A stretch of 64,000 nt of DNA from Hemiscyllium ocellatum (GCF_020745735.1 NC_083401.1:129701740-129765739), one strand, 5' to 3'; counted from the stretch's first letter, positions 12,986 to 61,516 are shown. The notes: a model not told the origin generated them from the sequence alone. A program made the numbers and translations.

Positions 12986-13004
12986 ACCATAACTGGCAAA
13001 ACAC

Positions 13005-21179: not shown

Positions 21180-23345
21180 GAGTAAAGATGGAAAGAACTG
21201 CAGATGCTGTAAATCAGAAACAAAAAGAGAAGTTGCTGGAAAAGCTCAGCAGGTCTGGCAGCATCTGTGAACAGAAATCAAAGTGAACTTTTCAGGTATT
21301 GTCATCCTCAGATCTGATGGTAGCTAGGAAAATGTCAGCTTATACGCAATTGATATGGGGAGGGTGGTGAGGCGTAATCGATAGGTGGGGATAGAGCCCA
21401 AACAGAGAAAACAGTTGGACAGACAAGGGAGATGATAATGATCTGGCGAGGAGGGTAAATAGTTATTAATAGAAACTGTTAGTGACTAATAATAGGTAGT
21501 GTGTAATGGCAGGAAACAGGGCTTGGTATGTGGGGTAGGAAGCTGTGACGTGGGAGAGTTTAGGCCCTAAAGTTATTGAAATTGATATTGAGGCCAGAGG
21601 ACTGCAGAGTCCTCAACCAGAAAATGAGGTGATATTCTTCCAACTTGCGCTGAGCTTCGCTGGAGCACTGCAGCAAGCCTGAGACAGAGCTGCTGGCCAG
21701 AGAACAGGAGTGGTGTGTTAAAGTAGCAGGCAACTGGAAGCTCGGGGTCATTTCTGTGGGAAGAACGTAGATGTTCTGCGAAGTGGTCACCCAGTCTCCT
21801 CATTTCCCCAATGGAGACCACATTGTGAACAGTGAATGCAGGAGAATGGATTGTGTGAAGTGCATGTTACAGGGGAAGGTGCCATGAGGCTGTGTTAGGG
21901 GAATATTGGGTAGGTGGGTGTGGTGTTGGGAATGAAGTAAGAGTGGACCAGGGTGTCCCAAAGGGAATGGTCCCTGCGGAAGGTGGACAAGGGAGGGGAA
22001 GGGAGTATGTCTCTGCTGATGGCATCTTGCTGGAAATGGTACAACTGGTGGCTGATGATCTTCTGGATGTGGATGTTAGCGCAATGGTAGGTAAGGACAG
22101 GGGAGCCCTTGCACTGTTGTGGGAAGAGAGAGGGGGGTTAGGGCAGGAGATGGGTCTGACCTGGTTGAGGGCCCTGTTGACAACAGAGTTGGAGAATCCT
22201 CAGGTTGAGGAAGAAGGTGGACATTTTGGAGGCTCCCTTCTTAAAATTGGCCTCATTGGAGCATAGGCAAAAGTGAGGACTGCAGATGCTGAAGATTAGA
22301 GTTGAGAGTGTGGTGCTAGAAAAGCACAAGTCAGGCAGCATCTGAGGAGCAGAAAAATCGACGTTTCAGGCAAAAACCCTATTGCCCGAAATGTTGATTT
22401 GCCTGCTCCTTGGATGCTGCCTGACCTGCTATGCTTTTCCAGCACCACACTCTCGACTCATTGGAACATATGCGAAAGAGAGGGAGGAACAGGGAGAATG
22501 GAATGGAGGCTTTACAGGAAGCAGGGTGCTCGGATGTATAGTTCAGGTAGCTGTGGGAGCCAGTTGGTTTATAGTGGATATGTGGCAAGTCTATCCCCAG
22601 AAATGGAAACAGAAACGTCGAGCAAGTGGAGAGAGAAGTCAGAGATAGACCAAGTGAAAGTGGGATGGAATTAGAAGCAAAATCAGTGAACTTTTCCAAT
22701 TTGAGACAAAAGAGGCAAGGAGTACCGATTAGATCATTGATATATCGGAGAAAGAATTGTGGCTAGAGGCCAGAATAAGATGTGAAATGTTCCATGTATC
22801 CCATGAAGATATAGTCATAACTGGGACCCATGCGAATACCAATGGCCAACCCCTGACCTAAAGAAAATGAGAGGAGTTTAAAAAGTTGTTGAACTCAGCC
22901 AGCCAGAGGAGAGTGGTGGTGGGTAGGTACGGTTCAGGCCTTTGCTCCAGAAAGATGTGGAAAGCCTGAGACTATCCTGGTGGGAGATGGACGTGTAAAG
23001 GGATTTTTTTCCTGAGTAGGCAGCTGGAGCCTGCAAACTGGATATTCCGAAACTGGTGCAAAACATCAGAGGAATTGCAGATGTACGTGGGCAGGGACTG
23101 GATTGGGGAGAAAAGACTGAGTCAAGGTAGGAGGAGATTAGTTTTATGGTACAGGAGCATGCAAAAACAATGGGTCTGCCCATTGTGGATTTTTGCAAGG
23201 GGGTAGAGTCGACCTGTACAAAGCTGGTGGACTATCAGCTTGGAAGCAGTGGTGGGCAGATAGCCAGATGAAATGAGGTCAGTGACTGTAGGAGACTCAA
23301 TGGTCTGATGTTCCATGATGGGGTCATAGTCCAGGGGAAGACTGA
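21180..23345 (-). mobile_element. Penelope-like element with RT and GIY-YIG remnants, directly upstream of the SCARB2 promoter
   Basis: Minus-strand fragments SLYTSISHQD, GLAIGIRMGPSY, RYINDLIG (YIDD-like), YKPTGSHSYLNYTSEHP, RKLEEYHLIF...GLNINF; degenerate terminal repeat at 21190-21310. Confidence 0.85.
22266..22456. mobile_element. Fold-back PLE-terminus insert with 14-bp TSD, nested in older PLE
   Basis: TSD ctcattggagcata 22252-22265 / ctcattggaacata 22457-22470; the arms meet at gtttcaggcaa-aaaccct-a-ttgcccgaaa (hammerhead stem II). Confidence 0.88.
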
Positions 23346-26082: not shown

Positions 26083-26530
26083 ACAACACTTGCATTCATG
26101 TTGAATTCCTAAATATAAGGAAATATCTTAAGATGCTGCTGAGAAGTGTCACTAAACAGAATTATCACTGAATCATGGAAATGTTAGGGCACATGACTGA
26201 AGTCTTGGCCAGAGAGAGATGTTGAGGAGTATCTTTGAGGAGGAAAGTCACTGATAGGTAAACCAAGGCAAGTCTTTAGTTGTCAAAATGTTTTTAATAA
26301 TGAAGTGATTAAAACTGGCAATGCTAAAGACCAGAAAAAGTGAGGCTGGGATGTGTCTGAGGCTTGTGATAGGGGAAGAGCTTGGGCATGACGGGCAAGA
26401 AAGGTCAAGGAAAGATTTATAAAATTTAAGAATTTTTAAAGTCATTGTGTTACTTAACCAGGAGCCAATATAGAAGTGTTGGATGAATGGCATTTGGTGC
26501 AAATTAGGACATGAGCAGAAGAGTTTTTGA
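26083..26530 (-). mobile_element. Old L2/CR1-clade LINE 3' remnant
   Basis: acttgcatt...gactgaagtcttggccagagagagatgttgaggagtatctttgaggagga; resembles 57820-57872 plus 58175-58480. Confidence 0.45.
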
Positions 26531-36931: not shown

Positions 36932-37256
36932 CTACATTTCCTCTAATTTGTTCCATTTTGTGATGGCAAAGGTGTTGTCCATGCAGTGAACCCAAAGTTT
37001 GGGTTGTAGGTGGGGCAGGTTGCTCATTGGTGTCTCTGCAGTACTGCTTCTGCTAAGAAGCCCAACACTGGTGATCCCAGGATGTTCCATTGATTTGTTT
37101 GTAGGTCTTGTTTTGAAAGTGAGGTTGGTAGTGAGGCACAGGTCTACAGGCATGAGGATGTTGTCCTTGCTGATGATGTTGGTGCTGTCTGGTGAACGCA
37201 ACACAACGAAACAGCTACTGGTGAACCCAAAGGACCCGATACCAACAACCAGCAAA

Positions 37257-38310
37257 ACAGAACTGGCTTGAAGGTAGAAGGCAGAGGGTGGTGGAGGGTT
37301 GCTTTTCAGACTGGAGGCCTGTGACCAGTGGGGTGCACAAGGATCAGTGCTGGGCCCACCAGTTATCATCATTTATATAAATGATTTGGATATGAACATA
37401 GGAGGCATAGTTAGCAAGTTTACAGATGACACCAAAATTGGAGTGGACAGCGAAGAAGGTTACCTCTGATTACAACAGGATCTTGATCAGATGGGCCAAT
37501 GGGCTGAGAAGTGGCAGATGGAGTTTAATTCAGATAAATGCGAGGTGCTACATTTTGGAAAAGCAAATCTTAGCAGGACATATACACTTAATGGAAGGTC
37601 CAAGGGAGTGTTGCTGAACAAAGAGACCTTGGAGTGCAGGTTCATAGCTTCTTGAAAGTGGAGTCACAAGTAGATAGGATAAGGAAGAAGGTGTTTTGTT
37701 TGCTTTCCCTTATTGGTCAGAGTATTGAGTACAGGAGTTGGGAGGTCATATTGCAGCTGTACAGGACATTGGTTAGGCCACTTTTGGAATATTTTGTGCA
37801 GTCCTGGTCTCTCTCCTATCAGAAGGATGTTGTGAAACTTGAAAGGGTTCAGAAAAGATTTACAAGGATGTTGCCAGGGTTGGAGGATTTGAGCTACAGG
37901 GAGGGGCTGAACAGGCTGGGGCTGTTTTCCTTGGAGCGTCGGAGGCTGAGGGATGACTTTACAGAGGTTTATAAAATCATGAGGGGCATGGATAGGGTAA
38001 GTAGACAAGATCTTTTCCCTACAGTGGGGGAGTCCAGAGCTAGAGGGCATATGTTTAGGGTGAGAGGGGAAAGATATGAAAGGGACCTAAGGGACACCTT
38101 TTTCACGCAGCGGGTGTCGTGTGTATGGAACGAGCTGCCAGAGGAAATGGTGGCGGCTGGCACAAATACAGCATTTAAAAGTCATCTGGATGGTTATATG
38201 AATAGGACAGGCCAAATGCTGGCAGGTTGGACAAGATTAGGTTAGGTGATCTGGTTTGCATGGACTAGTCGGACTGAACGATTTGTTTCAGTGCTGTACA
38301 TTTCTATGAC
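37257..38310 (+). mobile_element. CR1/HER1-type LINE, 5'-truncated
   Basis: ORF 37634-38245 is the CR1 ORF2 C-terminus (LYRTLVRPLLEY, LERVQKRFTRM); ends tttctatgac. Confidence 0.95.
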
Positions 38311-41729: not shown

Positions 41730-43545
41730 CAAGAGGGTATCCAGGAAAGGGTTGGCCTACACAAAGAGGAAATGAATGTGTGGAGCCAGATGAGGTAGCC
41801 GAGGTCCTAAATGAATACTTTGTTCTTATTCTATTGTGTTCTATCAAGAGCGAGAATTGATCGAGGATGATCTCTGGGAAGGGAGTGTCAAGCTTCTATG
41901 CCAAGTTGCTATTAGAAAGGAAGTGGTGTGGTCCGTCTTAAAATGTATTGAGGTAGATAAGCCCCTAGGCCCTGATGGGATCTATCCATAATACTGAGGG
42001 GGGGCAAGAGAATAAGTTGCTGGAGCATTGACATACATCTTTGTATCCCCTTTGGCAATAAGTGAGGTCTTGGAGGACTGGAGAATGGCCAATGTTGTTC
42101 CACTGTTTAAGAAGGACAGGGATGATCCAGGAAATTGCAGGCCTGTGACCTTCACGTTGATGGTAGAGAAATTATTGGAAAGGCTTCTTTGATAAGATCT
42201 ATGCATGTTTCATAGCAAATTGACTTATTAATGATAGACTAACTGATTTTGAGGGGTGGTTGTGCCTCATTATCTTGATCGAGTTTTTTTGAGGAGGTGA
42301 TAAAGATGATCGAGGGAAAAATCGGTTCATGTTGTCAACGTGGACTTCAGTGATGTCTTTAACAAGGTCCCTTATGGCAGACTAGTTCAAAAGTTGAAGT
42401 CACATAGTATCAAAGGTGACCTGGCAAGATGGGTACAGAACTGACTCTCTCATAGGAGACAGAAGGATGCTTCTTGGAATGGAGGGCTGTGACTAGTGTT
42501 CCACAGGGATCCGTGCTGGGACCTCTGTGAGCTACATAAATGAATTGGAGGAAAACATAGCTGGTCTAATTAGTAAGTTTGTGGACATTACAAAGATTGA
42601 GGTAACAGGTAGCAAGGAGGATTGTCAGAGGGTACAGATCAGTTGGAGGCATGGGCAGAAAAATGGCAGATGGATTTAATGCAGACCAATAAGAGGTAAT
42701 ACACTTTGGAAGGTCAAGTACAGGTGGAAATTGTACAGTAAATGGCCAACTCTTAGGAGTATAAATGTGCAGAGGGATGTGATTTCATGTCCTTCAATCA
42801 CTGAAGGTGGCAGTGCAGGTAGATAAGATAGTGGAAAGAGGCTTTGGGGCATGCTTGCCTTCATTGGAAGGTGCATTGAGTATAATAATTGGTCAGGGCT
42901 TTTGCCCGAAATGTCGATTTTCTTGCTCCTCGGGTGCTGTGACCTGCTGTACTTTTCTAGCACCACTCTAATCTAGACTCTATAAGGATAGGTCAGTAAT
43001 GCTGCAGCTTTAAAGAATTTTACTTAGGCCACATTTGAAATATTGCATACAATTCTGGTCACCATACTACCAGAAAGATGTGACTGCTTTGGAGAGGGTA
43101 CAGAAAAGGCTTACCAGGATGCTTCTATGAAGAAAGGCTGGGTTTGTTTTATCTGGGATGCAAGTCACTCCTCAGCCTCCTAGCAGATGTATACAAGATT
43201 GTGAATGGGATGGCTAGAGGATAGATTGAGTCATCTTCCCAGTTTAGAGGGGTCAGTTAGTAGGGGACAGGTTTAAGGTGTGAGGGGTAAAATTCACAAA
43301 AGATGTGCAAGACACATTTTTCGCACAAAGGGTGTTGAGGGCTTGGAACGCATTGCCTGAGGAGTTGTTGGAAGCAGACACCATAGCAGATTTCAAGAAG
43401 TATCTGGATGAGTACATGAATAAGAAGGGAGTAGAGGGATACGGATCTTGTAAATGAAGACAGTTAGTATGGACGGGCAAAAAAGTGAAGTCATGGGCTT
43501 GGAGGGCCGAAGGGCCTGTCCGTGTGCTGGTTTGTTCATTGTTTG
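41730..43545 (+). mobile_element. Old CR1 RT + 3' end
   Basis: [29 protein letters not shown] and LERVQKRLTRM-like remnants; probably continues 40575-41175. Confidence 0.85.
42897..42980 (+). mobile_element. 84-bp PLE terminal-repeat insert in CR1, starting at hammerhead stem II
   Basis: gggcttttgcccgaaatgtcgatt...ttttctagcaccactctaatc flanked by degenerate direct repeats tataataattggtcag / tataaggataggtcag. Confidence 0.8.
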
Positions 43546-44802: not shown

Positions 44803-45885
44803 GTGAGTTGCTGGCTTTTTTAAATTCCCTTTGCAATAGACATCTCAAGGTACTGTCAAATTAACTTGTGTATTAGAGATTAACTTATAAATTTGAACTG
44901 CCTCTGATCTTCATTGGAATTTAAACTTCAGACGTTAGCTCCAAATTTTGGTGATGGATTTTTAGATTATTGAAAAGAAATTTTGTTTTTCTGAGGGGCA
45001 CAACTCCATAAGGGGTAGATACCCTGGATAACTCTGATGTTCCACATTGGATCTGTGTTTGCGTTAGAGTGAAAATTGGGACGTGTGACCTGTGCACTTA
45101 AACCTTTGATATTGAGACTTTCTAATCAAGTTCAGGTCAATTAGGCAGCAAGGCATTTGAAATTAAGGTGCCTGGCCCAACCATCATAGGAAAAGGCATA
45201 TGCCACTTACTCCTGAAGCTTGCTCTGCTATCCAGTGAGATCATGGCTCATCTGCAACTTAACTCCATAAACCTGCCTTTGTCCCTTTCACTTTCAGTAA
45301 CTTTAAACTTACGAAAACTTGTCAACTTTGCACAGATATCATTAGCAGCGCCTAGGAGCTTTGGACAAACTAGAACTAAATACCAGGCTAGAGCAAACTA
45401 TGAATGTTTATTCATAGGATTCTGGGTAATCCAAGATGGAGGACGGGAAAAATTTCTGGCTGTAAGAGCTGCTCCTTTTTTTTTGTTTGAGATATTTTAG
45501 GTGCTGGAGGGGATTCCCTCGAGTTCCAGGAGCAGCAAGTACTGTTGCATTGTTTTGGAACTTTGGGGAAAAAAAAGTCAAAACAACAGCAGTTTTAAAA
45601 GGGGGAAGAGCAGACAAAGGAAGCACATGGTGAGGACAGTGCAGGAGAGAGAGAACCTGCACAGTTACTGCCTTTGCTGTTTTTGAATTCATGTGTCGCT
45701 GGACATTAGAGTTCATCTGGGAAAATGAACAAACAGTGAATGTCACAACTCATCTTGGAGGAACTGATATGGGGCAAAGTTCACAGCACAGAATCAGATA
45801 AGTTAATTGTTGTTTTAAGTCTGTCCAAGAGAGAGGCTGTGTTAATGTGTACAGTGGGTTCTTTCTTGATTATATGTTTTTGGAG

Positions 45886-46097
45886 CTTAAAAATGTGTTG
45901 CTGGAAAAGCGCAGCAGGTCAGGCAGCATCAAAGGAACAGGAGAGTCGATGTTTCGGGCAATTCTTCATTCCTGAAGAATGGCTTATGCCCAAAACGTCA
46001 ACACTCCTGTTCCTTTGATGCTGCCTGACCTACTGCGCTTTTCCAGCAACACACTTTTAAGCTTTGATCTCCAGCATCTGCAGTCCTCACTTTCTCC
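45886..46097. mobile_element. Fold-back PLE-terminus insert with 13-bp TSD, nested in CR1 5'UTR
   Basis: TSD tatgtttttggag 45873-45885 / 46098-46110; arms meet at gtttcgggca-attcttca-ttcCTGAAGAatggcttatgcccAAAAcgtc (mutated hammerhead). Confidence 0.9.
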
Positions 46098-48370
46098 TAT
46101 GTTTTTGGAGATAAGTCTCTTGATTAAACTTAAAATATAAGCCATAGCTCTTAAAATAACCTGGGGCAGTGTTTGTAGAGGAATAAGATGGTGTTATTTT
46201 CTGGGTCTGTAGATTGTGAAGGAGCAAAAATGGCCTTTGCAGTGATATGTACTTCTTGTCAGATGTGGGAGTTTAAAGAGAGTTCAAGGGTTATTGCAGA
46301 TTATATCTGCCATAAATGCTGTTGGATGCGAATCTTATCAGATCGAGTGGATCAGTTGGAGAGACAGATAGAAGCGATGAGGAATTTGCAACAGTATGTG
46401 ATGGAAGGGGAAAAAGTCTCACATACAGTCACATAGATGGGTTAATTCCAGGAAGGGTGAGAGAGGTCAGCACCTAGGGCAGGAATCTTTTGTGGATATA
46501 CCCATTTCAAACAGGTATGCTGTTTTGGAAAATGTAGGGGGTGATGGATTCTCAGGGGAACGTAGCACGAACAGCCAAGTTTCTGGTATTGAGACTGGCT
46601 CTAATGCAACGAGGGGTACGTCAGCTTCCAAGAGATCAATTGTGTAAGCGGATTCTGTGGTCAGAGGTACAGACAGACGTTTCTGTGGCCAACAGAGAAA
46701 AAGCAGAATGGTGTGTTGTTTCCCTGGTGCCAGGATCAAGGATGTCTCAGAGAGGGTGCAGAATGTTCTCACGGGGGACAGGGGCCAGCAGGAGGTCATT
46801 GTCCACATTGGAACCAATGACATAGGAAGGGAAAAGGTTGAGACTCTGAAGGGAGATTACAGATAGGCAGAAATTTAAAAAAGCGGTCCTCAAGGGTAGT
46901 AATATCTGGATTACTTCCAGTGATATGAGTTAGTGAGGGCAGGAAAAGGAGGATAGAGCAGATGAATGCATGGCTGAGGAGTTGGTGTATGGGAGAAGGA
47001 TTCGCATGTTTGGATCATTGGAATCTCTTTTGGGGAAGAAGTGACCTGTACAAGAAGGACGGATTGCACCTAAACTGGAAGGGGACTAATATACTGGCAG
47101 GGAAATTTGCAAGAACTGCTTGGGAGGATTTAAACTAGTAAGGTGAGGGCGATGGGACCCAGGGAGATAGTGAGGAAAGAGATCGATCTGAGACGGGTAC
47201 AGCTGAGAACAGAAGTGAATCAAACTGTCAGGGCAGGCAGGGACAAGGTAGGACTAATAAATTAAACTGCATTTATTTCAAATGCAAGGGGACTAACAGG
47301 GAAGGCAGATGAACTCAGGGCATGGTTAGGAACATGGGACTGGGATATTATAGCAATTACAGAAACATGGCTCAGGGATGGGCAGGACTGGCAGCTTAAT
47401 GTTCCAGGATACAAATGCTACAGGAAGGATAGAAAGGGAGGCAAGAGAGGAGGGGGAGTGGCATTTTTGATAAGGGATAGCATTACAGCTGTGCTGAGGG
47501 AGGATATTCCCGGAAATAAATCCAGGGAAGTTATTTGGGTGGAACTGAGAAATAAGAAAGGGATGATCACCTTATTGGGATTGTATTATAGATAGCCTAA
47601 TAATCAGAAGGAAATTGAGAAACAAACTTGTAAGGAGATCTCAGCTATCTGTAAGAATAATAGGGTGGTTATGGTAGGGGATTTTAACTTTCCAAACATC
47701 GACTGGGACTGCCATAGTGTTAAAGGTTTAGATGGAGAGGAATTTGTTAAGTGCGTACAAGACAATTTTCTGATTCAGTATATGGATGTACCTACTAGAG
47801 AATGTGCAAAACTTGACCTACTCTTGGGAAATAAGGCAGGGCAGGTGACTGAGGTGTCAGTGGGGGAGCACTTTGGGGCCAGCGACCATAATTCTATTCG
47901 TTTTTAAATAGTGATGGAAAAGGATTGACCAGATCTAAAAGTTGAAGTTCTAAATTGGAGAAAGACCAATTTTGATGGTATTAGGCAAGAACTTTCAAAA
48001 GCTGATTGGAGGCAGACGGCTGGAAAATGGGAAGCCTTCAGAAATGAGATATCAAGAATCCAGAGAAAGTATATTCCTGTCAGGGTGAAAGGGAAGGCTG
48101 GTAGGTATATGGAATGCTGGATGATTAAAGAAATTGAGGGTTTGGTTAAGAAAAAGAAGGAAGCATATGTCAGGTATAGACAGGATGGATCGAGTGAATC
48201 CTTAGAAGCGTATAAAGGAAGTCGGAGTATATTTAAGAGGGAAATCAGGAGGGCAAAAAGGGGACATGAGAAAGCGTTGGCAAATAGAATTAAGGAGAAT
48301 CCAAAGGGTTTTACAAATATATTAAGGACAAAAGGGTAACTAGGGAGGGAATAGGGCCCCTCAAAGATCA

Positions 48371-48766
48371 TATTCTGGATTAGTGGTCCTGGAAGAGTGC
48401 AGTATCCAAAGTGCAGCGAAATCGACGTTTTGGGAAAACTCCCTTCATCAGGAATAAAGGCAGAGAGCCTGAAGCGTGGAGAGATAAGCTAGAGGAGGGT
48501 GGGGGGTGGGGAGAAAGTCGCATCGAGTACAGTGGGTGAGTGGGGGAGGGGATGAAGGTGATAGGTCAGGGAGGAGAGGGTGGAGTGGATAGGTGGAAAA
48601 GGAGATAGGCAGGTAGGACAAGTCCCCATGACTTGCTCGGACAGTGCTGAGCGGAATGTTGGAACTAGGGTGAGGTGAGGGAAGGGGAAACGAGGAAACT
48701 GTTGAAGTCCACATTGATGCCCTGGGGTTGAAGTGTTCTGAGGCGGAAGATGAGGCGTTCGTTTTA
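48371..48766 (-). mobile_element. PLE 3' fragment inserted in CR1 ORF2 with 14-bp TSD
   Basis: TSD cccctcaaagatca 48357-48370 / 48767-48780; same family as 1-852; hammerhead at 48421-48454 with GAAA changed to AAAA. Confidence 0.92.
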
Positions 48767-51521
48767 CCCCTCAAAGATCAGCAAGGCGGCCTTTGTGTGG
48801 AGCCACAGAAAAAGGGGGAGATACTAAATGAATATCTTGCATCAGTATTTACTGTGGAAAAGGATATGGAAGATATAGACTGTCAGGAAATAGATGGTGA
48901 CATCTTGCAAAATGTCCAGAATACAGAGGAGGAGGTGATGGATGTCTTGAAACGCATAAAGGTGGATAAATCCCCAGGACCTGATCAGGTGTACCCAATA
49001 ATGCTGTGGGAAGCAAGAGAATTGATTGCTGGGCCTCTTTCTGAGATATTTGTATCATCGATAGTCACAGGTGAGGTGCCAAAAGACTGGAGGTTGGCAA
49101 ATGTGGTGTCACTGTTTAAGAAGGGTGGTAAAGACAAGCCAGGGAACTATAGACCGGTAAGCCTGACCTCGGTGGTGGGCAAGTTGTTGGAGGAAATCCT
49201 GAGGGACAGGATGTACATGTATTTGGAAAGGCAAGAACTGATTAGGGATAGTCAACATGGCTTTGTGCGTGGGAAATATTGATTGAGTTTTTTGAAGAAG
49301 TAACAAAGAAGATTAATGAGGGTAGAGCAGTAGATGTGATCCATATGGACTTCAGTAAGGCATTCGACAAGGTTCCCCATGGGAGACTGATTAGCAAGGT
49401 TAGATCAAATGGAATAAAGGGAGAACTAGCCATTTGGATACAGAACTGACTCAAAGGTAGAAGACAGAGGTGGTGGTGGAGGGTTGTTTTTCAGACTGGA
49501 GGCCTGTGACCAGTGGAGCGCCACAAGGATTGGTGCTGGGCCCTCTACTTTTTGTCATTTACATAAATGATTTGGATGCGAGCATAAGAGGTACAGTTAG
49601 TAAGTTTACAGATGACACCAAAAATGGAGGTGTAGTGGACAGCGAAGAGGGTTACCTCAGATTACAACAGGATCTGGACCAGATGGGCAATGGGCGAAGT
49701 GACAGATGGAGTTTAAGTTTGATAAATGCGAGGTGCTGCATTTTGTGAAAGCAAATCTTAGCAGGACTTATACACTTAATGGTAAGGACCTAGGGAGTGT
49801 TGCTGAACAAAGAGACCTTGGAGTGCAGGTTCATAGCACCTTGAAAGTGGAGTCGCAGGTAGGTGGGCTAGTGAAGGCAGTGTTTGGTATGCTTACCTTT
49901 ATTGGTCAGAGTATTGAGTAGAGGAATTGGGAGGTCATGTTGCAGCTGTACAGGACATTGGTTAGGCCATTGTTGGAATAATTCATGCAATTCTGGTCTC
50001 CTTCCTATCGGAAAGATGTTGTAAAACTTGAAAGGGTTCAGAGAAGAATTACAAGGATGTTGCCAGGGTTGGAGGATTTGAGCTACAGGGAGAGACTGAA
50101 CAGGCTGGGGCTGTTTTCCCTGGAGCGTCGGAGGCTGCGGGGTGACCTTATACAGGTTTACAAAATTATGAGGGGCATGGATAGGGTAAATAGACCAAGT
50201 CTTTTCCCTGGTGTGGGGGAATCCAGAACTAGAGGGCATAGGTTTATGTTGAGAGGGGAAAGATATAAAAGAGAGCTCAGGGGCAAATTTTTCATGCAGA
50301 GGGTGGTGCATGTGTGGAATGAGCTGCCAGAGGAAGTGGTGGAGGCTGGTGCAATTGCAACATTGAAGAGGCATTTGGATGGGTATATGAATAGGAAGGG
50401 TTTGGAGGATATGGGCCGGATGCTGGCAGGTGGGACTAGATTGGGTTGGGATATCTGGTCGGCGTGGACAGAATGGACCGAAGGGTCTGTTTCCATACTG
50501 TACATCTCTATGACTCTATAACATTATAAAACATCCAAAGGTGTAGCAGAGCAGGGCTCTACAAGTGCTTTATTCCATTGAGTCTCTGTCCCATGTGATC
50601 TGATGTTTCTACACATGCTCAGTCACTATTGTTAGAGTATTGATGCAATTTTATTCTTTATTCCACATTTCCAAATCTTGAGCCCTTCCTACTATTTACA
50701 GGGATTTTTTTTTTGTGTTGGGGTAATCTCTGGGATGGTTTCACCATTCTGTCCAACCAGGTACTGAGTTATTTTTGAGGTAATTAAGGATTTGATTATT
50801 CCAAACACATCCTCTGAGGTCCTTCATTCCTTGCCTCTGTCATTATTAGCAGTGTTGTCTTGTTTACCTCCTGGGGATAAGCGTGTTTAGACCTTCTGGC
50901 TGCTGGCCATTTCAGCAAAATCATGGCACTCCTGTTATTTTAAGTGATGCTAGTTTGTTTAGACAGGGTATGAGCTTGGTTACTGCAATGTATTAATTAC
51001 AGTGTAGCACCTTGGTGAACTTCTGACCAATCTACATGCAAAGCACTGGAAACAGTGAATTATGGTACATTGTCAGAGATGATATAAGCTGTGTTTTCCT
51101 ACATGGAAAATATCCTTCCTCATGAGGTTTAGCTATTAACCTGTCAGAAGTTTTAGAGCCACATTTTTTGAAACTTATGTGAGAGAAATTTTTTGGAGAG
51201 GTAATGGGAATTTGTTCACGTTGGCAAGTGTTTTACAAGTGGACAGAGTAAATCTTGGAGAGTCCTAGCTTGCTTTCATTTAGATAATTCAGGACCTGGT
51301 TTATTTTTATTAGAGGAAAGGTGCATCACTCGGAAGGGCTTTTGGTTTTAATGGGTGCAAGTCCTGGTTGAAATAGTTTCCTCTAAAGGAAGAAGCTCAA
51401 AAGTTGGACAATATGTTAATGCCATTCAAGAGTTTTGTGCTTTGGAAGTTCCAGTCCAGAGTATTTGGCTTGAACTCTGAAGGTGTTTCTAGTCTCAGTT
51501 GTGTGAGAGAATATTCAAGGA

Positions 51522-53257: not shown

Positions 53258-55755
53258 GGAAGAGGGAATCAAACTCTCATGACTAGGAAATGAGAGAAAC
53301 AGCTAAGTCGAGCATGCAGATGTCATAGTGTTGGGAGTTCTCAGTACTGTAGAGGATTGCTATTAGATAATGGTGTTTTTTGCTGTTTCACAATCTTTCA
53401 TTTACTTATCACTTATTTTGTGTAATCTAAGTCCGATCTGCAGCATTGCACACTTGTGGTTTGGTGAAAGGCCACTTTGCTTTTTTCAAAGAAAATCAAA
53501 ATATAATCCATGAAGCTAGATTTTAGTCTGGGATCTGAATTGTCCAGTAATAACATAAGCTTAAATCATTGCAATACTCCACTGTCAGGGAGGTATTTCT
53601 TTCTGCTACTATCTGTGAATGGAACAATTGGTGACCGTGTTCTTGAGAGAAGCTGAGCCACTGACTACGTGTGTATTACTGTGTCCTGGCCAAATATTTG
53701 AAGATATCAAGATGACCCTGGGCAATCTTCAGGATGATATCCAGATGCAGACATCATGGGATCAGCAAACGCTCATCTTGGAGCAAGCGCTGATCCCTGA
53801 TGTAGATGTGTGACTTTGGATCCTGGGTAGCATCTTTGTGATTTATTTTGCATTCAGTAGTTAATAAAAATTTATGGTCAGTTTCCATTGTAAATGGTAG
53901 TCTTAAGGCAGAGTCAGTTTTCTTTCATGCCCAGGTTGTAGCAAGTAGTTCTTTCTTTCCTGTTGAATGTAGCCATTTTGTTTCAGTCAGTACCTTTGCA
54001 GTGTCATATTATCCCTTGAATTTGGAGTGAAATTGCTCACAGATTTGTGGACAATGCATCTGCCATTACAGTAGGAAGAAGTTCCGACCTCTTGAAGGTA
54101 TGTGCATCTTTTTAATTTGGTCAAATTATGATTGTTGATATTCAGTCAGCATCAAGCCTGATCTCTCTCTTCAAAATTGTCATTGAGGTGTATTTAGTTG
54201 AGCAAAGTGATGCAAAGGTTTGTAACCATTGTGGTTCACAACAGTCATAAGCTTTTGACACAGCCACTGCAGGGATATGGGTGGTCGGTGCCTTTTTTGA
54301 CACACTTCCCTGCTTACTGCAGTGGTGCTGTCTTGGTTCTGCACCTTCTCAGGTGAGTGACTTGGAATGGCTTACACCTGCTATGCTCTTGTTGATTCTG
54401 TTTCAAGCCCTGTACATTCTGGAAACTCCCTGGACAGAGTTCATTACTCAACTTGAGCTGATGTCGTGTCCCCTCTGGTGCTGTTTGTACTTGTCCCTGG
54501 ACTGTTGTTGCAGTTTTCCTTTCCTTCGTCAATTGTTTGGCTGGCCTTGCAGTCCACCACCTACTGATGCTGCTGCTGGGCTTTTTCATCGCACGTATTG
54601 CTGCTTTTCTGAATTTCCTCACCATTTGTTATTATATGAATATCGTTAGCAGCTTGTAGTGGTTGGACATACAAGAACTAAACATCAAGCCAGTGCAAAT
54701 TATTAACTTTTATGAAGTAAAAATTTCATTTAAAATCAACTCGCTTAACATTGTTGACCTTGAAAGGAGATAATTAGTGCATATGTATTTATTTTGAAGA
54801 ATACTTACGGTGTAGAAGGAGACAATTCATCATCATCTATCTACATATTTTTTCTGAGCATTTTAACTTTATGCTGTCCTTTTCCCATAATCCTGCCCAA
54901 TTATTCAGCTTACATAACTTTCCAATCCAGTCTTGAATGCCTCAGTTGAACCTGCATCCACCACATTTCCATCTAATCTCAGAGTTGCTCAATGTAGGTA
55001 ATCCTACCAGCTGATACCTGCAGACTTCCTAAATGTCTGCCCCTAGATGGCACCTGGTCAGCCTAACTGTAGTGTAGTGTACTGTAAGCGAGTAATCCTT
55101 TTAAAACACTAATGTATTGCACGGTGTGTGGTATTTATCCACATTTTGTGATTTGTATTTTTTAAAGTTACTTCAATTTGAAATACACGGTAAGTCACAC
55201 ACAGCACAGTATTTTCATCTGTACAGTTTTTTTCCAGGTCAAAAGTTCTGCAAGTACCGAGCACTGGCTTTGACGTTGATCCATGCTTTGCTTAGTTGTT
55301 TTGTTTAAAGTCATAATTCTCAGGAACACAATCGCACCTTTAAGTGAGGGATCCCTATTTACTCAATCATGGTAAAGCAGGGCTTTGCTACTGCCATCTT
55401 CTCTCGATATAAAGTTGTACTCATCCACTTTCAGCTGACATATTGTACTTGTTTGTGACATTTAAACAATTTATATAGCTGGGCTCCCAATGTTCTTTAG
55501 ATCTCCACCATTCCCAGCTGTTCACCATTTAAGGAGGTCAGAGGGGTACAGGGGGTCTAATATAACTGGTTGGTAAGTTTTGGTTTTTTTCAGCACTGCC
55601 TCTTGGAAATACTCCATGCCCCTTGCCATCTACCAGAAGGTTCAACCATAGAGATAAAATCCTCTTCCCAATCAGCTGTGTAGGAAAGTTTGATTTTATT
55701 TTCAATTCTGTTTGTACTTGAATTAATTTATCTTTTTGTTTCTTTTTGTAAATAG

Positions 55756-55947
55756 ACTGTAATGAATATGGTAAGGTATTCCAGTCTCCAGATTTTACTG
55801 TTAAATGGTCTGCTGATTGCTGAAAGGGCTGGCATTTTTACAACAAGAACAGTACACGAGCTCCTTTGGGGTTACAAAGATCCAGTACTTTCAGCCATCC
55901 ACTTCTTCAAAAAGGACATTGATAATGAATTTGGGCTCTATTATAAG
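55756..55947 (+). CDS. SCARB2: LIMP-2 coding exon 4 (apical helical bundle)
   Basis: tttttgtaaatAG|ACT GTA ATG...TAT AAG|GTatgt; 192 nt; ...IFTTRTVHELLWGYKDPVLSAIHFFKKDIDNEFGLYYK. Confidence 0.96.
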
Positions 55948-56471
55948 GTATGTCATTTCTCAAGTTTTTTATTGGTGAAGAATTTGCAAAGTTGAAAATG
56001 CACAGCAATTCTGCTAACGTTTTGAAGAAAGACTGGAAACTTTAAAAGTCTGGTTTTGATGATAGTGTGCAAGTCAGTGCTGACCTCCTTAACCTTCAGA
56101 TCATGATAGTCTGATCCACCCCCTAATCATTTTGTGTGTGGGTGGCTTGTTGCTTGGTACTGCTGATTTGAGTGATACTTTAGGAAGCTACCCTGCAAGT
56201 TGTAATTAGATCTTGAAGCCATGGAGCCCTCTACTCAAAGAAAAATGCACGCATGAGGTTGCATTCACGATTTCAGCGGTGACCTGGAATTTTGTTCTTT
56301 ATGAAAAGAGCATTTTTTTTCAGCTGAACTGGGGGCACAGGGAACGATCAACAGTTGTGGAGTTCCCACAGTTGTGTGTAGAAACGGGGGTCAGGAAGAG
56401 AAAAAGATTCTCTGCCTTCTCAGTTTGTTCTTGTAGAAAGTTAGCCTGACTGCATGAAATCAGATGTATGC

Positions 56472-56775
56472 ACTTGAAAGTATCACTTTTATTTTTAAAA
56501 AATCTCAGTTTTTCCAAATTATTTTGCCGTCGATGTTTATATTTTAGTTTCTCGGTGTGTTGCAATGTTCCAACAAAGCACGACATCAAGAAATAAGAGC
56601 TTCAGAAATTGGCCGCATTATGATTGTCCTCCCACTTTCTTTCTTGCATTTTCTTCTCCCTACAGCCCCAATACCACACTCTTGGCTTGTTTATTTGCTC
56701 ATAGAGGACCCATTCACTCCTTTTCACATTTACACCCATTTTGCATCTCTCTTTCTCTTTGACCACCATTAACTA
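56472..56775 (+). repeat. Left arm of ~300-bp inverted duplication (SCARB2 intron 4)
   Basis: Reverse complement of 57873-58174; 6 substitutions and 3 small indels by hand alignment. Confidence 0.97.
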
Positions 56776-57178
56776 CCTCTTTGTCTTCTGCACTGTGGAT
56801 CTGTGCCATCTGCTCCTTGATCCTCCTCCGCCTCTATGAAAACTATTATAAAATCACCATTTTCCAACACCTTTCAGTTCTGAAGAATGTTGTTTTTCTC
56901 TCCACGGATGCTGCCAGACTTGAGTTTCTCCAACAGTCTTTATTTGTTGTACAGTATATTTTTAAGTTGTGTGCTCTTTTTATGGACTGACTGGATGAGT
57001 CTGTACACTATTATGTTTCATTTTTGATTCTTGAACTAATTTTGTGTGGAAGCACGGGTTAATTTAAATGATTAGAATTGCGTTTGGAAAGGTTTCTGAC
57101 CTGGATGGTCAAGTGATTTACTTTGTGTATCTGTTTGCCTGGCAGTCATTGGTTGTAATGTGTTCTTGTACTTTTCAG

Positions 57179-57270
57179 ATGAATGGGACAGATGATGGTG
57201 AATATGTTTTTCTCACTGGGCAAAAAAGTTATAAAAATTTTACGACCATTGTTGAATGGAGAGGTAACAA
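57179..57270 (+). CDS. SCARB2: LIMP-2 coding exon 5
   Basis: cttttcAG|ATG AAT GGG...AAC AA|GTaagt; 92 nt; MNGTDDGEYVFLTGQKSYKNFTTIVEWRGNK. Confidence 0.97.
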
Positions 57271-57627
57271 GTAAGTGTTTTTTTTTCTTTTTGTTTCCAA
57301 TTGAGGATTAATAATCTACCGAATTTGACAACGTGCAAACCCGAACAAAGTGTTGCTGATCTGGCAGCTTTAAACTCTGGCTAGATTCCTGTCAATCAAT
57401 TTCTGGTGTACTGTTAATGCTGGCATTTTACGGGAACATGTACAGAACTATCCATTAAATGTTTTGACAATGTAACGCACAGATCTGTTTTGTGAAAGCA
57501 TCAATTGTAGTGCATGGTGCAAATTGATGGTTGCTGTTCCTTTTTTGTGCTGTTCTAATGCAAGTCTTTTTTTCGGGCTGGTTTTGTGTTTCTCCTACCC
57601 CTCCCTCAATTTTTATAAAATGTTTAG

Positions 57628-57747
57628 GTCATTGGACTGGTGGACAACAGGTGCATGCAATATGATCAATGGGACTGATGGAACCTCTTTCCACCCATTG
57701 ATAACCAAAAATGAAACGCTGCGCTTCTTTTCTTCAGACCTTTGCCG
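57628..57747 (+). CDS. SCARB2: LIMP-2 coding exon 6
   Basis: tgtttAG|G TCA TTG...TGC CG|GTaagc; 120 nt; SLDWWTTGACNMINGTDGTSFHPLITKNETLRFFSSDLCR. Confidence 0.97.
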
Positions 57748-57872
57748 GTAAGCTATTTCTTCCATTTTCTTTTGGTTTTCTTTTAAAATTCAGCTAATGT
57801 GCAAAGCTGATAGTAGCAGGAACTTGCATTTATAGAGTGACTTCTAATGTAGTAGCACATGCTCGTGTTTCC

Positions 57873-58174
57873 TAGTTAATGGTAGTCAAAGAGAAAGAGA
57901 GATGCAAAATGGGTGTAAATGTGAAAAGGAGTGAATGGGTCCTCTATGAGCAAATAAACAAGCCACGAGGGTGGTGTTGGGGCTGTAGGGAGAAGGAAAT
58001 GCAAGAAAGTGGGAGGACAATCATCATGCGGCCAATTTCTGAAGCTCTTATTTCTTGATGTCGTGCTTTGTTGGAACATTGCAACACACCGAGAAACTAA
58101 AATATAAACATCGACGGCAAAATAATTTGGAAAAACTGAGATTTTTTTAAAAAATAAAAGTGATACTTTCAAGT
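57873..58174 (-). repeat. Right arm of ~300-bp inverted duplication (SCARB2 intron 6)
   Basis: Reverse complement of 56472-56775. Confidence 0.97.
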
Positions 58175-59571
58175 AATCGGACACATATTGGCACCAAACC
58201 AAAGGACATCTAAAAGCTTTGCCAAAGAGAAGTGTTTTAAGGGGTGAGTTAAAGGAGGAAGGAGAGATACTGAAACAAGAGAATTGGAAAGGAAATGCCT
58301 GATCTTAGGATATAGAAAGAAAGGTACCTAATACTGGGAGTGACAGAAATGTGGGATATGCAAGTGGCCAGAATTGTGGAGCGCAGGTAGATCATGGTGG
58401 TTTTTAGGAGTGAACAAGTTAGAAAGGCAGGGAGAACATGGTCACAAAGGCATGTGGACACCTTTTCTTTAAACTCTTGGATATCTTTTAATTCTTTCTT
58501 TTTATCCCTTTCCTGCTCTTTTTTTTTCCCATTGCCACCTCAAGTTTTAATGTTTTGTTTTGTGAATACCGCAGTAAAACACTGAAGAAAATAAGGCTGG
58601 AGCTGAAGCCGAAGCCACCTTTTCTTCCAGTTCCAGGAAACTGGCTTCTATCCCAGAACCACAACACAAGCTCCACATGGTGCTCCAAGCACAAAGCTGA
58701 GCCTGAATAACCCTAAACCTCTGAATCTATCTGACACGCGCTAGAGTAGAATGCACTCAGTTTGCTGCTCACTTTGTATGTTATTATGAATAATGTCCAT
58801 GATGCAGGAATACACGATACACTGAGGACCATCTCTAATTTCCTGACACTGGTATTCATCATTTTGCTGATCTAAATGATCTTATGGATCAATAATTCAT
58901 GCAGCAGTTTAAAAATAAAATAATACCAAGGTAATTTTCAAATGACAGCCATTGGAAAGAAATTCTGGGAAGTTTCTCCTTCAATGTAAAGTCCTTACTT
59001 CCTTGCTTTATATTTATTTATAGCCTGTGTCCCCCTAGGAGGAGACCTGTGCAACCTGACCTTGTTGCTTTACTGTATCTGTCTGCATTCTCTTCAGAAT
59101 ATGTTCAATTATTTCTTCTTGGACATTTTTCAAGAAACATTTTAGTAAATTGATTCAATAATATGCCAATGTGGTGCCTTGAAATATTTATTATCTTAAA
59201 GCTACTTTATTATGCAAATTGTTAACTTTCTGAACTTCTCTATTTCAAAAATAGATAATATCCATGACCAGGATCTTCATATACATAGTCACTAAAGCAG
59301 TTCAGTTCTGTACAGTAGCATATGAACAAACAAACATTGGACGTTCTCCTCCCATCCTCCACACACTTTAACCACTTTAAAGAGGAGCATATCTTTTTGG
59401 GATGGTGCAAGGGGAGCAGATAAGAACACTCTGCAATCCCCTTTGAAAGCCACAGTTTTTTGTGTGTCTTTGGAATTCCATGCAATTCCCAAACTGTTGG
59501 GAATGGCAAGAGTCTGACACATTGATATGGCTTGTTTCAGGTCCTTTGGCACTGAATTGCAGTTTGACCTA

Positions 59572-59886
59572 GGCGGCGCGGTGACACAGTGGCTAGCACT
59601 GCTGCCTCACAGCGCCAGGGACCTGGGTTCAATTTCCGCCTCAGGCAACTGACTCTGTGGAGTTTGCATATTCTCCCCATGTCTGAGTGGGTTTCCTCCG
59701 GGTGCTCCGGTTTCCTCCCACAGTCCAAAAGTGTGCAGGTCAGGTGAATTGGCCATGCTGAATTGTCCGTAGTGTTAGGTGAAGGGGTAAATGTAGGGGA
59801 ATGGGTCTGGGTGGGTTCCGCTTCACTGGGTCGGTGTGGACTTGTTGAGCCGAAGGGCCTGTTTCCACACTGTAACTAATCTAATT
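59572..59886 (+). mobile_element. HE1-type SINE, full length
   Basis: ggcggcgcggtgacacagtggctagcactgctgcctcacagc...gggttcaatttcc...ctaatctaat. Confidence 0.95.
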
Positions 59887-60473
59887 AAATATATTATTGT
59901 TTGGCTCCCATTCTCTCAAATAATTGTTGCCTTGAGCATGCCAACCCATCCTAGTTCAAACCCAACTTGTGTGGAGCTGCCTTACCTTGTGGGAAGTGTA
60001 GTGGACCAGGAGGAGGACGTCCATTTCTTGATCCTGTACATCAGGTGACAGTGAAAAACCTCCATCAGTTTGAGCCACTGGATGCCTGTGGAACTTCACC
60101 ACAAGAACCTCAGGGGAACAGGCAACAAATATAATGGCTGTAATGTTTTGGGCACTTGCATTGTAAAATGCTTTTTAGCAAATGACATCCAGGTTACGCT
60201 TCAGTTTACACTGAACTGCTGTGTCAATATGAAGTTGTCATTGTAAAATAAGCAAATCACCATTGTCTGCTTTTTAAAATTGACCATTTTAAGCAGGTAA
60301 CACCCTCGTGTATACTGTTAGTCTCTCTAAATATTACGAAGCAACTTCTGGTTCAAAGTTTGTGTTCGATAACACTGGCGCAGAACGCAACTCATTCTGT
60401 ACTGTCTTGTCAATCTTTTTGAAAGTAAGAGGAGTTTGACTAATTATGCTTTTTTGAAAATTTTTCTTAATAG

Positions 60474-60652
60474 GTCTCTCTATGCCAATTTTGAGCAGGA
60501 GCTTCGTGTCAAAGGGATACCAGTTATGCGATTTGTGCCGCCAAATGAGGTTTTTGCCAATGTTACAGTCAACCCAGAAAATGCAGGTTTCTGTGTTCCA
60601 GCTGGAAACTGCCTGGGATCAGGTGTATTGAACATCAGCACTTGCAAGCAAG
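60474..60652 (+). CDS. SCARB2: LIMP-2 coding exon 7
   Basis: ttcttaatAG|G TCT CTC...CAA G|GTaact; 179 nt; [16 protein letters not shown]...[26 protein letters not shown] (LIMP-2-type [16 protein letters not shown]). Confidence 0.97.
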
Positions 60653-61516
60653 GTAACTGATTAAAGTCCCATGTTCCCTGTTGGAAGGAACAGAGTTCTA
60701 TTTGAAGGGAAGTTCTGGATCCTTCAAGATAAAGTTAAAGATTTTGTGGACTAACAGTACAAAAGGAGGCTGGTTAGCTCCACTGCCAGACAGCGAGGGT
60801 GTGGTTGAGCATGATGCCAACCGTGCATTCCTGTCTTTGCTGAGGTAGGTTTAGGACCTCTTCCTTTATCCCGCCCTTTAGCACGATGATGGTGTTAGGC
60901 TTGGTTAAGTTAGCATAAATAATCGTGTAGTACCTGAAGAAGAAAGGTATTACAGTTCCAGTGTGTTAAGATTTGTCATCTGGGAAGCATTTATTATGAA
61001 GAAGTTGTGATGTTACCAATAGTAGGTCAGAGTGCAATTTGTGTGGGAGTTCAAACTGGCAAGTATTGCAACCTGTGGTTGCACTTGCAGAACTCACCTT
61101 TAACAATTGTGTTTATAAGATATTGCAACTTAGGCTAAGTCCCACTGAAAAGGTCAATGGAATTTTGCAAATTGACTGCCTGAGGGTATTTAGCACTTGA
61201 AATGGTCTCAGCTGACTCAGGTCAGCATGTTACAACCAGGCCAGCCTGTCGATAATGTCACCGCTTGTATTGAGAGTGCATGTTTCTCTGTTCCTGGAAA
61301 CCTAACTAGGTTCAGTGCATATGGTGAGCTGCTATACAAATCAACTAAGCTAATCTTCCTCTTTTAATTTGAGTAAAGTGTGAGTTTAATTTGTGCAGTC
61401 ACTAAATATGTAGTAGTTACACTATAAATGAAAAGACACCTTATTTACAAAAGACAATACTATATAGGCACACTCGATCAATTAATGCTTTATTTTTCTC
61501 TCCTTGGCTACAATAG

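What the first reader, a model, noticed from the sequence alone, without database searches (positions are those of the whole stretch)
56472..58174. Young ~300-bp inverted duplication bracketing SCARB2 exons 5-6: candidate circRNA / exon-skipping switch
Seen: 56472-56775 and 57873-58174 are reverse complements at ~96% identity, ~400 nt before exon 5 and ~125 nt after exon 6. The left copy runs on into a PLE-like 3' remnant, while the right copy appears to split an old LINE relic (compare 26083-26250). This suggests a local templated duplication rather than two TE insertions. Exons 5+6 total 212 nt. Skipping joins exon 4 to exon 7 out of frame (GTC TCT CTA TGC CAA TTT TGA), giving a premature stop. 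A back-spliced circle begins with ATG and reads 71 codons to CG|A TGA. Established: flanking reverse-complementary intronic matches promote back-splicing, skipping and ADAR editing. Inference: a lineage-specific regulator of LIMP-2 dose, or a substrate for a 1.1-kb genomic inversion.
Basis: partly seen in the sequence, partly recalled or inferred. Interest (0 to 1): 0.72.

Follow-up and report, generated by a model that had tools for sequence, protein, structure and literature searches.

The report
Shark-specific inverted intron copy around exons
In the epaulette-shark LIMP-2 (SCARB2) gene, a 300-base piece of intron 4 was copied backwards into intron 6 after this lineage split from bamboo sharks. 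The two copies can pair in the RNA around exons 5-6, the classic set-up for making a circular RNA, but nothing yet shows that it does anything.

Summary
56472-56775 and 57873-58174 are reverse complements (96% identity, 6 substitutions and 2 indels, sharp ends). They are the only two copies in the window. They lie 403 nt before exon 5 and 125 nt after exon 6 of a LIMP-2/SCARB2 gene whose exons match Hemiscyllium ocellatum XP_060681829.1.

At the orthologous loci of Chiloscyllium punctatum, Rhincodon typus and Stegostoma tigrinum the left arm is present and continuous with its flanks. The right arm is missing at a clean empty site inside an old repeat.

The right arm carries four substitutions that arose at the left arm on the Hemiscyllium branch, so it was copied from the local left arm and not from a transposon master copy. 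There is no target-site duplication, about 6-7 nt of target were lost, and each junction has at most 1 nt of microhomology. This is the signature of a template switch or repair-templated insertion.

As RNA the arms form a 296-bp duplex (-521 kcal/mol) with no competing repeats nearby. Back-splicing or skipping of exons 5-6 is therefore a reasonable prediction. No RNA data could be examined, and an adaptive "dose switch" is unsupported. I file it as a new member of a known kind, of moderate interest, and a clean natural experiment between sister genera.

The parts
56472..56775 (+). Left arm (source copy): ancestral intron-4 sequence
   Evidence: Present at the orthologous position in C. punctatum (L001:41179-41483, 95.4%), R. 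typus and S. tigrinum. Alignments run through both of its ends, so it is not a discrete insertion.
57873..58174 (-). Right arm (derived inverted copy) in intron 6
   Evidence: Absent at a clean empty site in C. punctatum, R. typus and S. tigrinum. Shares 4 Hemiscyllium-derived substitutions with the left arm and has 5 substitutions and 2 indels of its own.
57179..57270 (+). LIMP-2/SCARB2 exon 5 (92 nt)
   Evidence: AG|ATG acceptor and AA|GTAAGT donor; matches P0231.
57628..57747 (+). LIMP-2/SCARB2 exon 6 (120 nt)
   Evidence: Matches solved LIMP-2 chains at E=2.4e-15; CCG|GTAAGC donor.
55756..55947 (+). Exon 4 (192 nt, ends in phase 0)
   Evidence: tblastn of P0231 residues 144-208; donor AAG|GTATGT; the same 64 aa are absent from C. 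punctatum isoform X2.
60474..60654 (+). Exon 7. It starts with the third base of the Arg codon; read after exon 4 it gives a premature TGA.
57790..57872 (.). Upstream half of the old interspersed-repeat relic that received the insertion
   Evidence: Continuous with 58175-58260 in the three species that lack the right arm.
58175..58260 (.). Downstream half of the same relic
   Evidence: About 6-7 nt of the ancestral target, between GTTTTC and TAATC, are missing in the window.
56851..56948 (+).
   Evidence: Weak matches to 22314-22400, 21219-21277 and 754-800. 754-800 lies downstream of an ORF with a weak GIY-YIG hit (E=0.0013, below the Pfam cut-off).

Best explanation
A single mutational event on the Hemiscyllium branch copied about 302 nt of SCARB2 intron 4 (56472-56775) in reverse-complement orientation into intron 6. 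It happened after the split from Chiloscyllium. The copy landed 1.1 kb downstream, inside an old repeat relic, and replaced about 6-7 nt of target. The event was a local template switch or a repair synthesis primed at a break, not a transposition. The result is a roughly 300-bp reverse-complementary match bracketing exons 5 and 6. In the pre-mRNA the arms should pair and loop out the two exons, bringing the exon-6 donor close to the exon-5 acceptor. By the established rules for such matches, this should favour some back-splicing (a 212-nt exon 5-6 circle) and some exon 4-7 skipping (frameshifted, with a premature stop). Most likely this is a tolerated by-product rather than a selected regulator. 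Shown here: the repeat, its polarity (left arm is the source, right arm the copy), its lineage specificity, the junction anatomy and the pairing potential. Inferred: the exact DNA mechanism and every RNA-level consequence.
For: Three species have an empty site. Window 57876 maps to L001:42589 and 58173 to L001:42592. Window 57861/58202 map to L002:21448/21513. Window 57859/58201 map to L003:29097/29163. The left arm is present and continuous with its flanks in all three. The five-way alignment shows that at 56553, 56582 and 56674 (both outgroups) and 56528 (one outgroup) L and R share a base that differs from C. punctatum and the outgroups. One change is L-only; five changes and two indels are R-only. 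The Hemiscyllium branch at L has 5 changes against 6-7 on the Chiloscyllium branch, which is balanced only if R descends from L. The junctions show no target-site duplication, loss of ancestral nucleotides, and at most 1 nt (T) of microhomology. The order of the four switch points (56472 < 56775 < 57872 < 58175) is the 3-2-1-4 pattern that PMC7954356 describes as generating a single inverted repeat. RNA: duplex of -521 kcal/mol, 296 intermolecular pairs, longest perfect helix 122 bp, and all 296 pairs retained in the MFE fold of the whole 4.5-kb intron 4 to intron 6 segment. No competing inverted repeats occur in 44.8-64 kb. Reverse-complementary matches promote both back-splicing and skipping in vivo (PMC8330042).
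Against: No RNA-seq, RT-PCR or editing data were available, so neither the circle nor the skipped mRNA has been seen. The annotated H. ocellatum protein is the full-length form that includes exons 5-6, so normal splicing clearly operates. Long, near-perfect duplexes are targets of ADAR1 and DHX9, which suppress circularisation (PMC8391333), so the yield could be low. Genome-wide copy number of the arm was not measurable; only about 216 kb from four species was searched. Presence of R rests on one assembly. The excess of changes on R (5 vs 1) is not statistically significant (two-sided binomial p about 0.22). It leaves the age uncertain, at roughly 0.2-0.4 of the Hemiscyllium-Chiloscyllium divergence.
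Confidence: 0.8

Rival explanations
1. The arms are two independent insertions of one young transposable-element family (a SINE, MITE or LINE 3' end) that landed in opposite orientation, like inverted Alu pairs.
For: Shark introns are full of young repeats; for example the SINE at 59572-59896 has at least 9 relatives in L001. The arm ends are sharp. In the right arm's + strand reading there is an AATAAA about 20 nt before its end.
Against: The left arm is not an insertion. It is continuous with its flanks in three other species, back to the orectolobiform ancestor. The right arm shares four locus-specific derived substitutions with the left arm. There is no target-site duplication, poly(A), terminal inverted repeat or tRNA-like head. 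No other copy occurs in 216 kb from four species.
Confidence: 0.03
2. The right arm is an assembly artefact, such as a chimeric or fold-back read incorporated into the contig.
Against: The two arms differ by 6 substitutions and 2 indels. An artefactual copy of the left arm would be essentially identical to it. The junctions fall cleanly at one point of an otherwise collinear orthologous alignment. The window has no gaps.
Confidence: 0.04
3. The repeat is a selected, lineage-specific regulator. It diverts a substantial share of SCARB2 transcripts into a circle, or into an NMD-targeted skipped mRNA, to tune LIMP-2 dose. Alternatively it makes a functional or translated 71-codon circRNA.
For: Very strong pairing potential close to both splice sites, with no competing repeats. 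The circle begins with ATG. Such matches can drive both outcomes (PMC8330042).
Against: There is no sign of constraint. The arms have diverged by about 2% in substitutions, against about 5% between the species. The source arm evolves like its flanks (95.4% vs 94% to C. punctatum; 76% vs 79% to R. typus). The ATG is simply the conserved Met at the start of exon 5 in all these sharks. No expression data exist.
Confidence: 0.07
4. The outcome is the same but the route went through RNA. A cDNA fragment of the SCARB2 intron-4 transcript was captured at a double-strand break in intron 6, rather than DNA-templated switching.
For: The source is transcribed as part of the same pre-mRNA. Capture at breaks gives no target-site duplication and small target deletions, as seen here.
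Against: There is no poly(A) or other retro-copy mark. The close proximity (1.1 kb, same chromosome) and inverted orientation are what replication or repair template switching predicts. Sequence alone cannot separate the two routes.
Confidence: 0.08

Closest known systems
Reverse-complementary-match (RCM) driven circRNA loci, e.g. inverted Alu pairs in human genes and the zip-2 RCM in C. elegans (PMC8330042)
   Same: Complementary sequences sit in the two introns that flank the exons, close to the back-splice acceptor and donor. They are predicted to loop out the exons and favour both back-splicing and skipping.
   Different: The arms here are not transposon copies. They are one ancient intronic segment plus its own local inverted copy. 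The duplex is unusually long and clean (296 bp, with a 122-bp perfect run). No circRNA has been observed.
Mouse Sry locus (Gubbay 1992, Capel 1993, Dubin 1995; cited in PMC8330042, otherwise from my own knowledge)
   Same: Arms produced by a local inverted duplication, not by dispersed repeats, flank an exon and are required for its circularisation.
   Different: The Sry arms are many kilobases long and flank a single-exon gene. Here the arms are 0.3 kb and lie inside a 12-exon housekeeping-type gene, and circularisation is only predicted.
Non-repetitive intronic complementary sequences of cSMARCA5 (I14RC/I16RC; PMC8391333)
   Same: A non-transposon complementary pair flanks the circularised exons and is subject to unwinding by DHX9.
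   Different: The origin of that pair was not traced. Here source, copy, polarity and lineage are resolved.
Template-switch mutations (four-point model, Loytynoja & Goldman; PMC7954356) and FoSTeS/MMBIR-type templated insertions
   Same: A stretch is replaced by the reverse complement of nearby sequence on the same chromosome. The point order is 3-2-1-4, with no target-site duplication, minimal microhomology and a small loss at the return point.
   Different: The copy is much longer (302 nt) and the template more distant (1.1 kb) than the short-range events surveyed in great apes. The mechanism is inferred from the scar only.

Membership tests
RCM-flanked circRNA-producing locus | Reverse-complementary sequences in the introns on both sides of the circularised exon(s) | tested here: met
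   304/302-nt arms at 96% identity in intron 4 and intron 6; 296 bp pair in the MFE fold of the whole segment.
RCM-flanked circRNA-producing locus | Canonical acceptor before the first exon and canonical donor after the last exon of the circle | tested here: met
   A pyrimidine tract and AG precede 57179; GTAAGC follows 57747.
RCM-flanked circRNA-producing locus | Back-splice junction reads or an RNase R-resistant product | not testable with these tools
   No RNA-seq or reads tool was available. No Hemiscyllium transcript contigs are in the protein cluster.
RCM-flanked circRNA-producing locus | Loss of the circle when one arm is removed | not testable with these tools
   C. punctatum is a natural 'right arm absent' control, but its RNA was not examined.
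Inverted pair of transposable-element copies (IRAlu-like) | Each arm is a discrete insertion flanked by a target-site duplication | tested here: not met
   The left arm is continuous with its flanks in three species. The right arm has no duplication and has a 6-7 nt target loss.
Inverted pair of transposable-element copies (IRAlu-like) | Dispersed family members elsewhere in the genome | tested here: inconclusive
   None in 64 kb of window plus 87+65+65 kb of three orthologous loci. The whole genome was not searchable.
Inverted pair of transposable-element copies (IRAlu-like) | Copies descend from a master element, not from each other | tested here: not met
   Four locus-specific derived substitutions are shared by L and R.
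Template-switch / templated-insertion mutation | The novel sequence is the reverse complement of nearby sequence, and the ancestral state lacks it | tested here: met
Template-switch / templated-insertion mutation | Junctions with no target-site duplication and 0 to a few nt of microhomology | tested here: met
   At most 1 nt (T) at each junction.
Template-switch / templated-insertion mutation | Short-range scale (tens of nt) as in the surveyed great-ape events | tested here: not met
   A 302-nt copy from a template 1.1 kb away. It works like such events but is larger than the surveyed class.
LIMP-2 / SCARB2 (CD36 family) gene | Exons encode a CD36-family protein closest to LIMP-2 | tested here: met
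   Exon 6 matches solved LIMP-2 at E=2.4e-15 against CD36 at 1e-8. All window exons match H. ocellatum 'lysosome membrane protein 2-like'. Identity is about 62% to tetrapod LIMP-2 and 57-59% to teleost LIMP-2c.

The most novel reading that the evidence does not exclude
The right arm created a new, abundant exon 5-6 circRNA (or a substantial NMD-directed skipping pathway) specific to Hemiscyllium. That would make this a dated birth of a circRNA by a non-transposon template-switch mutation, with Chiloscyllium as the unaltered sister state, possibly with a physiological effect on LIMP-2 level.
Probability: 0.08. Interest if true: 0.6.

Novelty: new member of a known kind. Interest (0 to 1): 0.38.

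Why it matters
Most intronic complementary pairs that drive circular RNAs are transposon copies whose history is hard to read. Here source, copy, direction, junction scars and lineage are all resolved. Two laboratory-kept sister genera differ by exactly this one arm: the epaulette shark has it and the brownbanded bamboo shark lacks it. That makes a clean natural test of how much a newly gained 300-bp match changes back-splicing, skipping and editing of a conserved housekeeping-type gene in vivo. It also documents a template-switch-type inverted copy in a vertebrate germline that is larger than the short-range events usually catalogued. If RNA data show nothing, it is simply a neutral scar.

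Tried and rejected
- **Copy number through the protein database.** I searched the 108-aa ORF that runs through the right arm. It found nothing. An exact look-up of five window ORFs showed that raw ORFs of this genome are not in that collection, so the blank carries no information.
- **Earlier findings.** Searches by place, sequence and words found nothing on this locus. The genome-wide look-up only confirmed a repeat-rich shark genome.
- **Rfam on 55.5-60.5 kb.** Only a sub-threshold mir-218 match at 58668-58704 (23.8 bits against a cut-off of 62). I treat it as chance.
Only a 51-nt, 68.6% match. It is not useful evidence and is superseded by the orthologous empty sites.
- **DNA that could not be fetched.** H. 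ocellatum itself, C. plagiosum, the chromosome-level C. punctatum and Heterodontus (files too large). Stegostoma isoform X3 was not on record, but isoform X1 worked.
- **Pfam on the arm ORF.** No family.
- **Literature.** No paper mentions a SCARB2 circRNA.
- **Precise loss of the right arm in the other lineages.** Rejected. It would need identical precise deletions in at least two branches, and it would not explain why the right arm carries Hemiscyllium-derived bases of the left arm.

Full report
**1. The observation**

The repeat finder reports them as three abutting pairs. BLAST joins them into one match: 56472-56775 against 58174-57873, 96.08% identity over 306 columns, E=1e-142.

The pairwise alignment shows 6 substitutions, one 2-nt indel and one 4-nt indel. 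Similarity ends abruptly at both ends. Widening the query by hundreds of bases on either side extends nothing.

No third copy exists in the 64-kb window. This is the only inverted pair longer than 100 nt and above 90% identity within 6 kb in the whole window. The window has no N.

**2. The gene and the exons**

Exon 6 matches solved LIMP-2 chains at E=2.4e-15, against CD36 at 1e-8. A phmmer scan with exon 7, followed by a homology search, led to P0231, "lysosome membrane protein 2-like" of Hemiscyllium ocellatum (XP_060681829.1).

tblastn of P0231 against the window gives 94-100% identity over exons 1, 2 and 4-7 (exons 1 and 7 at 100%). The lower values come from alignments that spill into intron. 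The window is therefore this species or something indistinguishable from it.

The protein is about 62% identical to tetrapod LIMP-2 and 57-59% to teleost "LIMP-2c". I treat it as the shark SCARB2 orthologue.

| Feature | Coordinates | Length |
|---|---|---|
| Exon 4 | ends 55947, phase 0 | 192 nt |
| Intron 4 | 55948-57178 | 1231 nt |
| Exon 5 | 57179-57270 | 92 nt |
| Intron 5 | 57271-57627 | 357 nt |
| Exon 6 | 57628-57747 | 120 nt |
| Intron 6 | 57748-60473 | 2726 nt |
| Exon 7 | starts 60474 | - |

(Boundaries.)

The left arm ends 403 nt before exon 5. The right arm starts 125 nt after exon 6. Exons 5+6 total 212 nt. Skipping them joins exon 4 to exon 7 out of frame, with TGA as the seventh codon. 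The circle read from its first ATG gives 71 codons and then TGA.

**3. Where the arms came from**

This was the open question, and comparative data settle it. I fetched three orthologous loci:

| Locus | Species and record |
|---|---|
| L001 | Chiloscyllium punctatum, BEZZ01000265.1 (same family, Hemiscylliidae) |
| L002 | Rhincodon typus, NC_063332.1 |
| L003 | Stegostoma tigrinum, CM060509.1 |

- **C. punctatum.** The window aligns collinearly at 94% from 55000 to 57876 (ending at L001:42589) and resumes at 58173 (L001:42592). The whole right arm is missing at a clean empty site. The left arm is present at L001:41179-41483 at 95.4%.
- **R. typus.** About 65 nt stand where the window has about 340: window 57861/58202 map to L002:21448/21513.
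- **S. tigrinum.** The same pattern: window 57859/58201 map to L003:29097/29163.
- **Left arm.** In all three species the alignment runs straight through both ends of the left arm. It is therefore old intron sequence, not a discrete insertion.

**4. Direction of copying**

The five-way alignment has these informative sites:

| Pattern | Sites |
|---|---|
| L = R, differing from C. punctatum and the outgroup(s), so derived on the Hemiscyllium branch | 56553, 56582, 56674 (both outgroups); 56528 (one outgroup) |
| C. punctatum alone differs | 6-7 sites |
| Left arm alone differs | 56672 |
| Right arm alone differs | 56619, 56652, 56678, 56682, 56764, plus both indels |

The right arm thus inherited changes that arose at this very locus after the Hemiscyllium/Chiloscyllium split. 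The topology is ((L,R),Cp) with the outgroups outside. A copy from an unrelated master element could not carry those four bases.

Branch lengths agree. There are 5 changes on the Hemiscyllium left-arm branch and 6-7 on the Chiloscyllium branch, which is balanced only under this history.

**5. Age of the event**

- L and R differ at about 2.0% of sites. The two species differ at 4.7-5.7% of sites in the flanks (mismatch counts). This places the event at roughly 0.4 of the divergence time.
- By the left-arm branch alone (1 of 5 changes after copying) the estimate is roughly 0.2.
- The excess on the right arm (5 vs 1, plus both indels) could reflect error-prone synthesis. It is not statistically significant (two-sided binomial p about 0.22, my calculation).

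**6. The scar**

The three species without the right arm share the target GTTTTC, then about 7 nt of the form xTGxxTG, then TAATC, inside a continuous old repeat relic. In the window the right arm sits between GTTTCC and AATCGG.

- There is no target-site duplication.
- About 6-7 ancestral nucleotides are gone.
- At most one T at each junction could be assigned to either partner.
- There is no poly(A), no terminal inverted repeat, no tRNA-like head and no Rfam family.

Read as a four-point template switch, the points lie in the order 56472 < 56775 < 57872 < 58175. This is the 3-2-1-4 pattern that PMC7954356 describes as producing a single inverted repeat. The present event is larger (a 302-nt copy from a template 1.1 kb away) than the short-range events surveyed there.

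I therefore read it as a local DNA template switch or break-repair synthesis. Capture of an intron-derived cDNA at a break cannot be excluded from sequence alone.

An assembly artefact is unlikely. The two arms differ at 6 sites and 2 indels, and the junctions are clean in an otherwise collinear alignment.

**7. What it is likely to do**

As RNA the two arms form a duplex of -521 kcal/mol with 296 intermolecular pairs and a longest uninterrupted helix of 122 bp. When the whole 4.5-kb segment from intron 4 to intron 6 is folded, all 296 pairs are kept. No other inverted repeat in 44.8-64 kb could compete. Both splice sites needed for back-splicing are canonical.

Published in-vivo mutagenesis shows that such matches promote both back-splicing and skipping of the enclosed exons (PMC8330042). 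ADAR1 editing and DHX9 unwinding counteract them (PMC8391333).

The reasonable prediction is some exon 5-6 circle and some frameshifted exon 4-7 mRNA in Hemiscyllium, and little or none in Chiloscyllium. This is inference; no RNA data could be examined.

Nothing points to selection:
- The arms are drifting apart.
- The source arm evolves like its flanks.
- The ATG that opens the circle ORF is simply the conserved Met at the start of exon 5 in all these sharks.
- The annotated protein is the full-length form.

**8. Comparison with what is known**

Functionally this belongs with RCM-flanked exons such as inverted Alu pairs and C. elegans zip-2. By the origin of the arms it is closest to mouse Sry, where a local inverted duplication supplies the arms. 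It also resembles the non-repetitive complementary pair of cSMARCA5. By mutational mechanism it matches template-switch or templated-insertion events. It is not a transposon pair; that membership test fails on target-site duplication, discreteness of the left arm and descent.

**9. Verdict**

The regulatory interpretation remains an untested prediction.

It is a new member of a known kind. Its main value is as a dated, polarised natural experiment between two laboratory-kept shark genera. I score interest as moderate.

Noticed in passing
L002:17404-20095 and L003:25224-27765 (corresponds to window ~56523-56530): Rhincodon and Stegostoma share a 2.5-2.7 kb block inside the orthologue of the left arm that the two hemiscylliids lack. 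It is probably a transposon insertion in their common ancestor; its start resembles the abundant shark repeat head. It does not affect the polarity argument.
   Followed up: partly
window 59572-59896: A SINE-like element in intron 6 with at least nine relatives (70-89% identity) scattered through the C. punctatum locus L001. It shows what a true dispersed repeat looks like in the same data, in contrast to the arms.
   Followed up: partly
window 45884-45960 / 45987-46063 and 6033-6132 / 6159-6258: Two tight hairpin-like inverted pairs (77 nt at 92% and 100 nt at 89%), each with a 26-nt spacer. The first translates to the recurrent repeat-tail motif in both orientations. This suggests a repeat family whose tail occurs head-to-head.
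   Followed up: no
window 1-411 and 12976-13509: ORF remnants with a CxxC...YIGET-type motif. The first has a weak GIY-YIG Pfam hit (E=0.0013, below the cut-off), consistent with Penelope-like element endonuclease remnants upstream of the recurrent tail motif.
   Followed up: partly
window 46400-49750 (intron 3); also 8242-8800, 37225-37650, 41815-42189: Long ORF fragments with LINE-type endonuclease and reverse-transcriptase motifs. These are LINE relics inside and upstream of the gene.
   Followed up: no
P0291 versus P0268 (C. punctatum isoforms): The annotated C. punctatum isoform X2 lacks exactly the 64 residues of exon 4, an in-frame skip. So alternative splicing next to the exon 5-6 block is annotated in the species that lacks the right arm.
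   Followed up: partly
P0001 (Acipenser sinensis, flagged UNVERIFIED_CONTAM): This sturgeon gene model lacks exons 5-6 and carries exon 7 twice. It is almost certainly a mis-assembled or mis-predicted model, not biology.
   Followed up: no
window 58150-58160 (+ strand, inside the right arm): The inverted copy places an AATAAA hexamer on the sense strand of intron 6, about 400 nt after exon 6. It is a possible cryptic polyadenylation signal; no evidence either way.
   Followed up: no
downstream of the gene in L002 (57046-65154, minus strand): LEAP-2 is the next gene downstream, on the opposite strand, in Rhincodon. The gene tables for Chiloscyllium and Heterodontus show the same, so synteny is conserved across sharks.
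   Followed up: no
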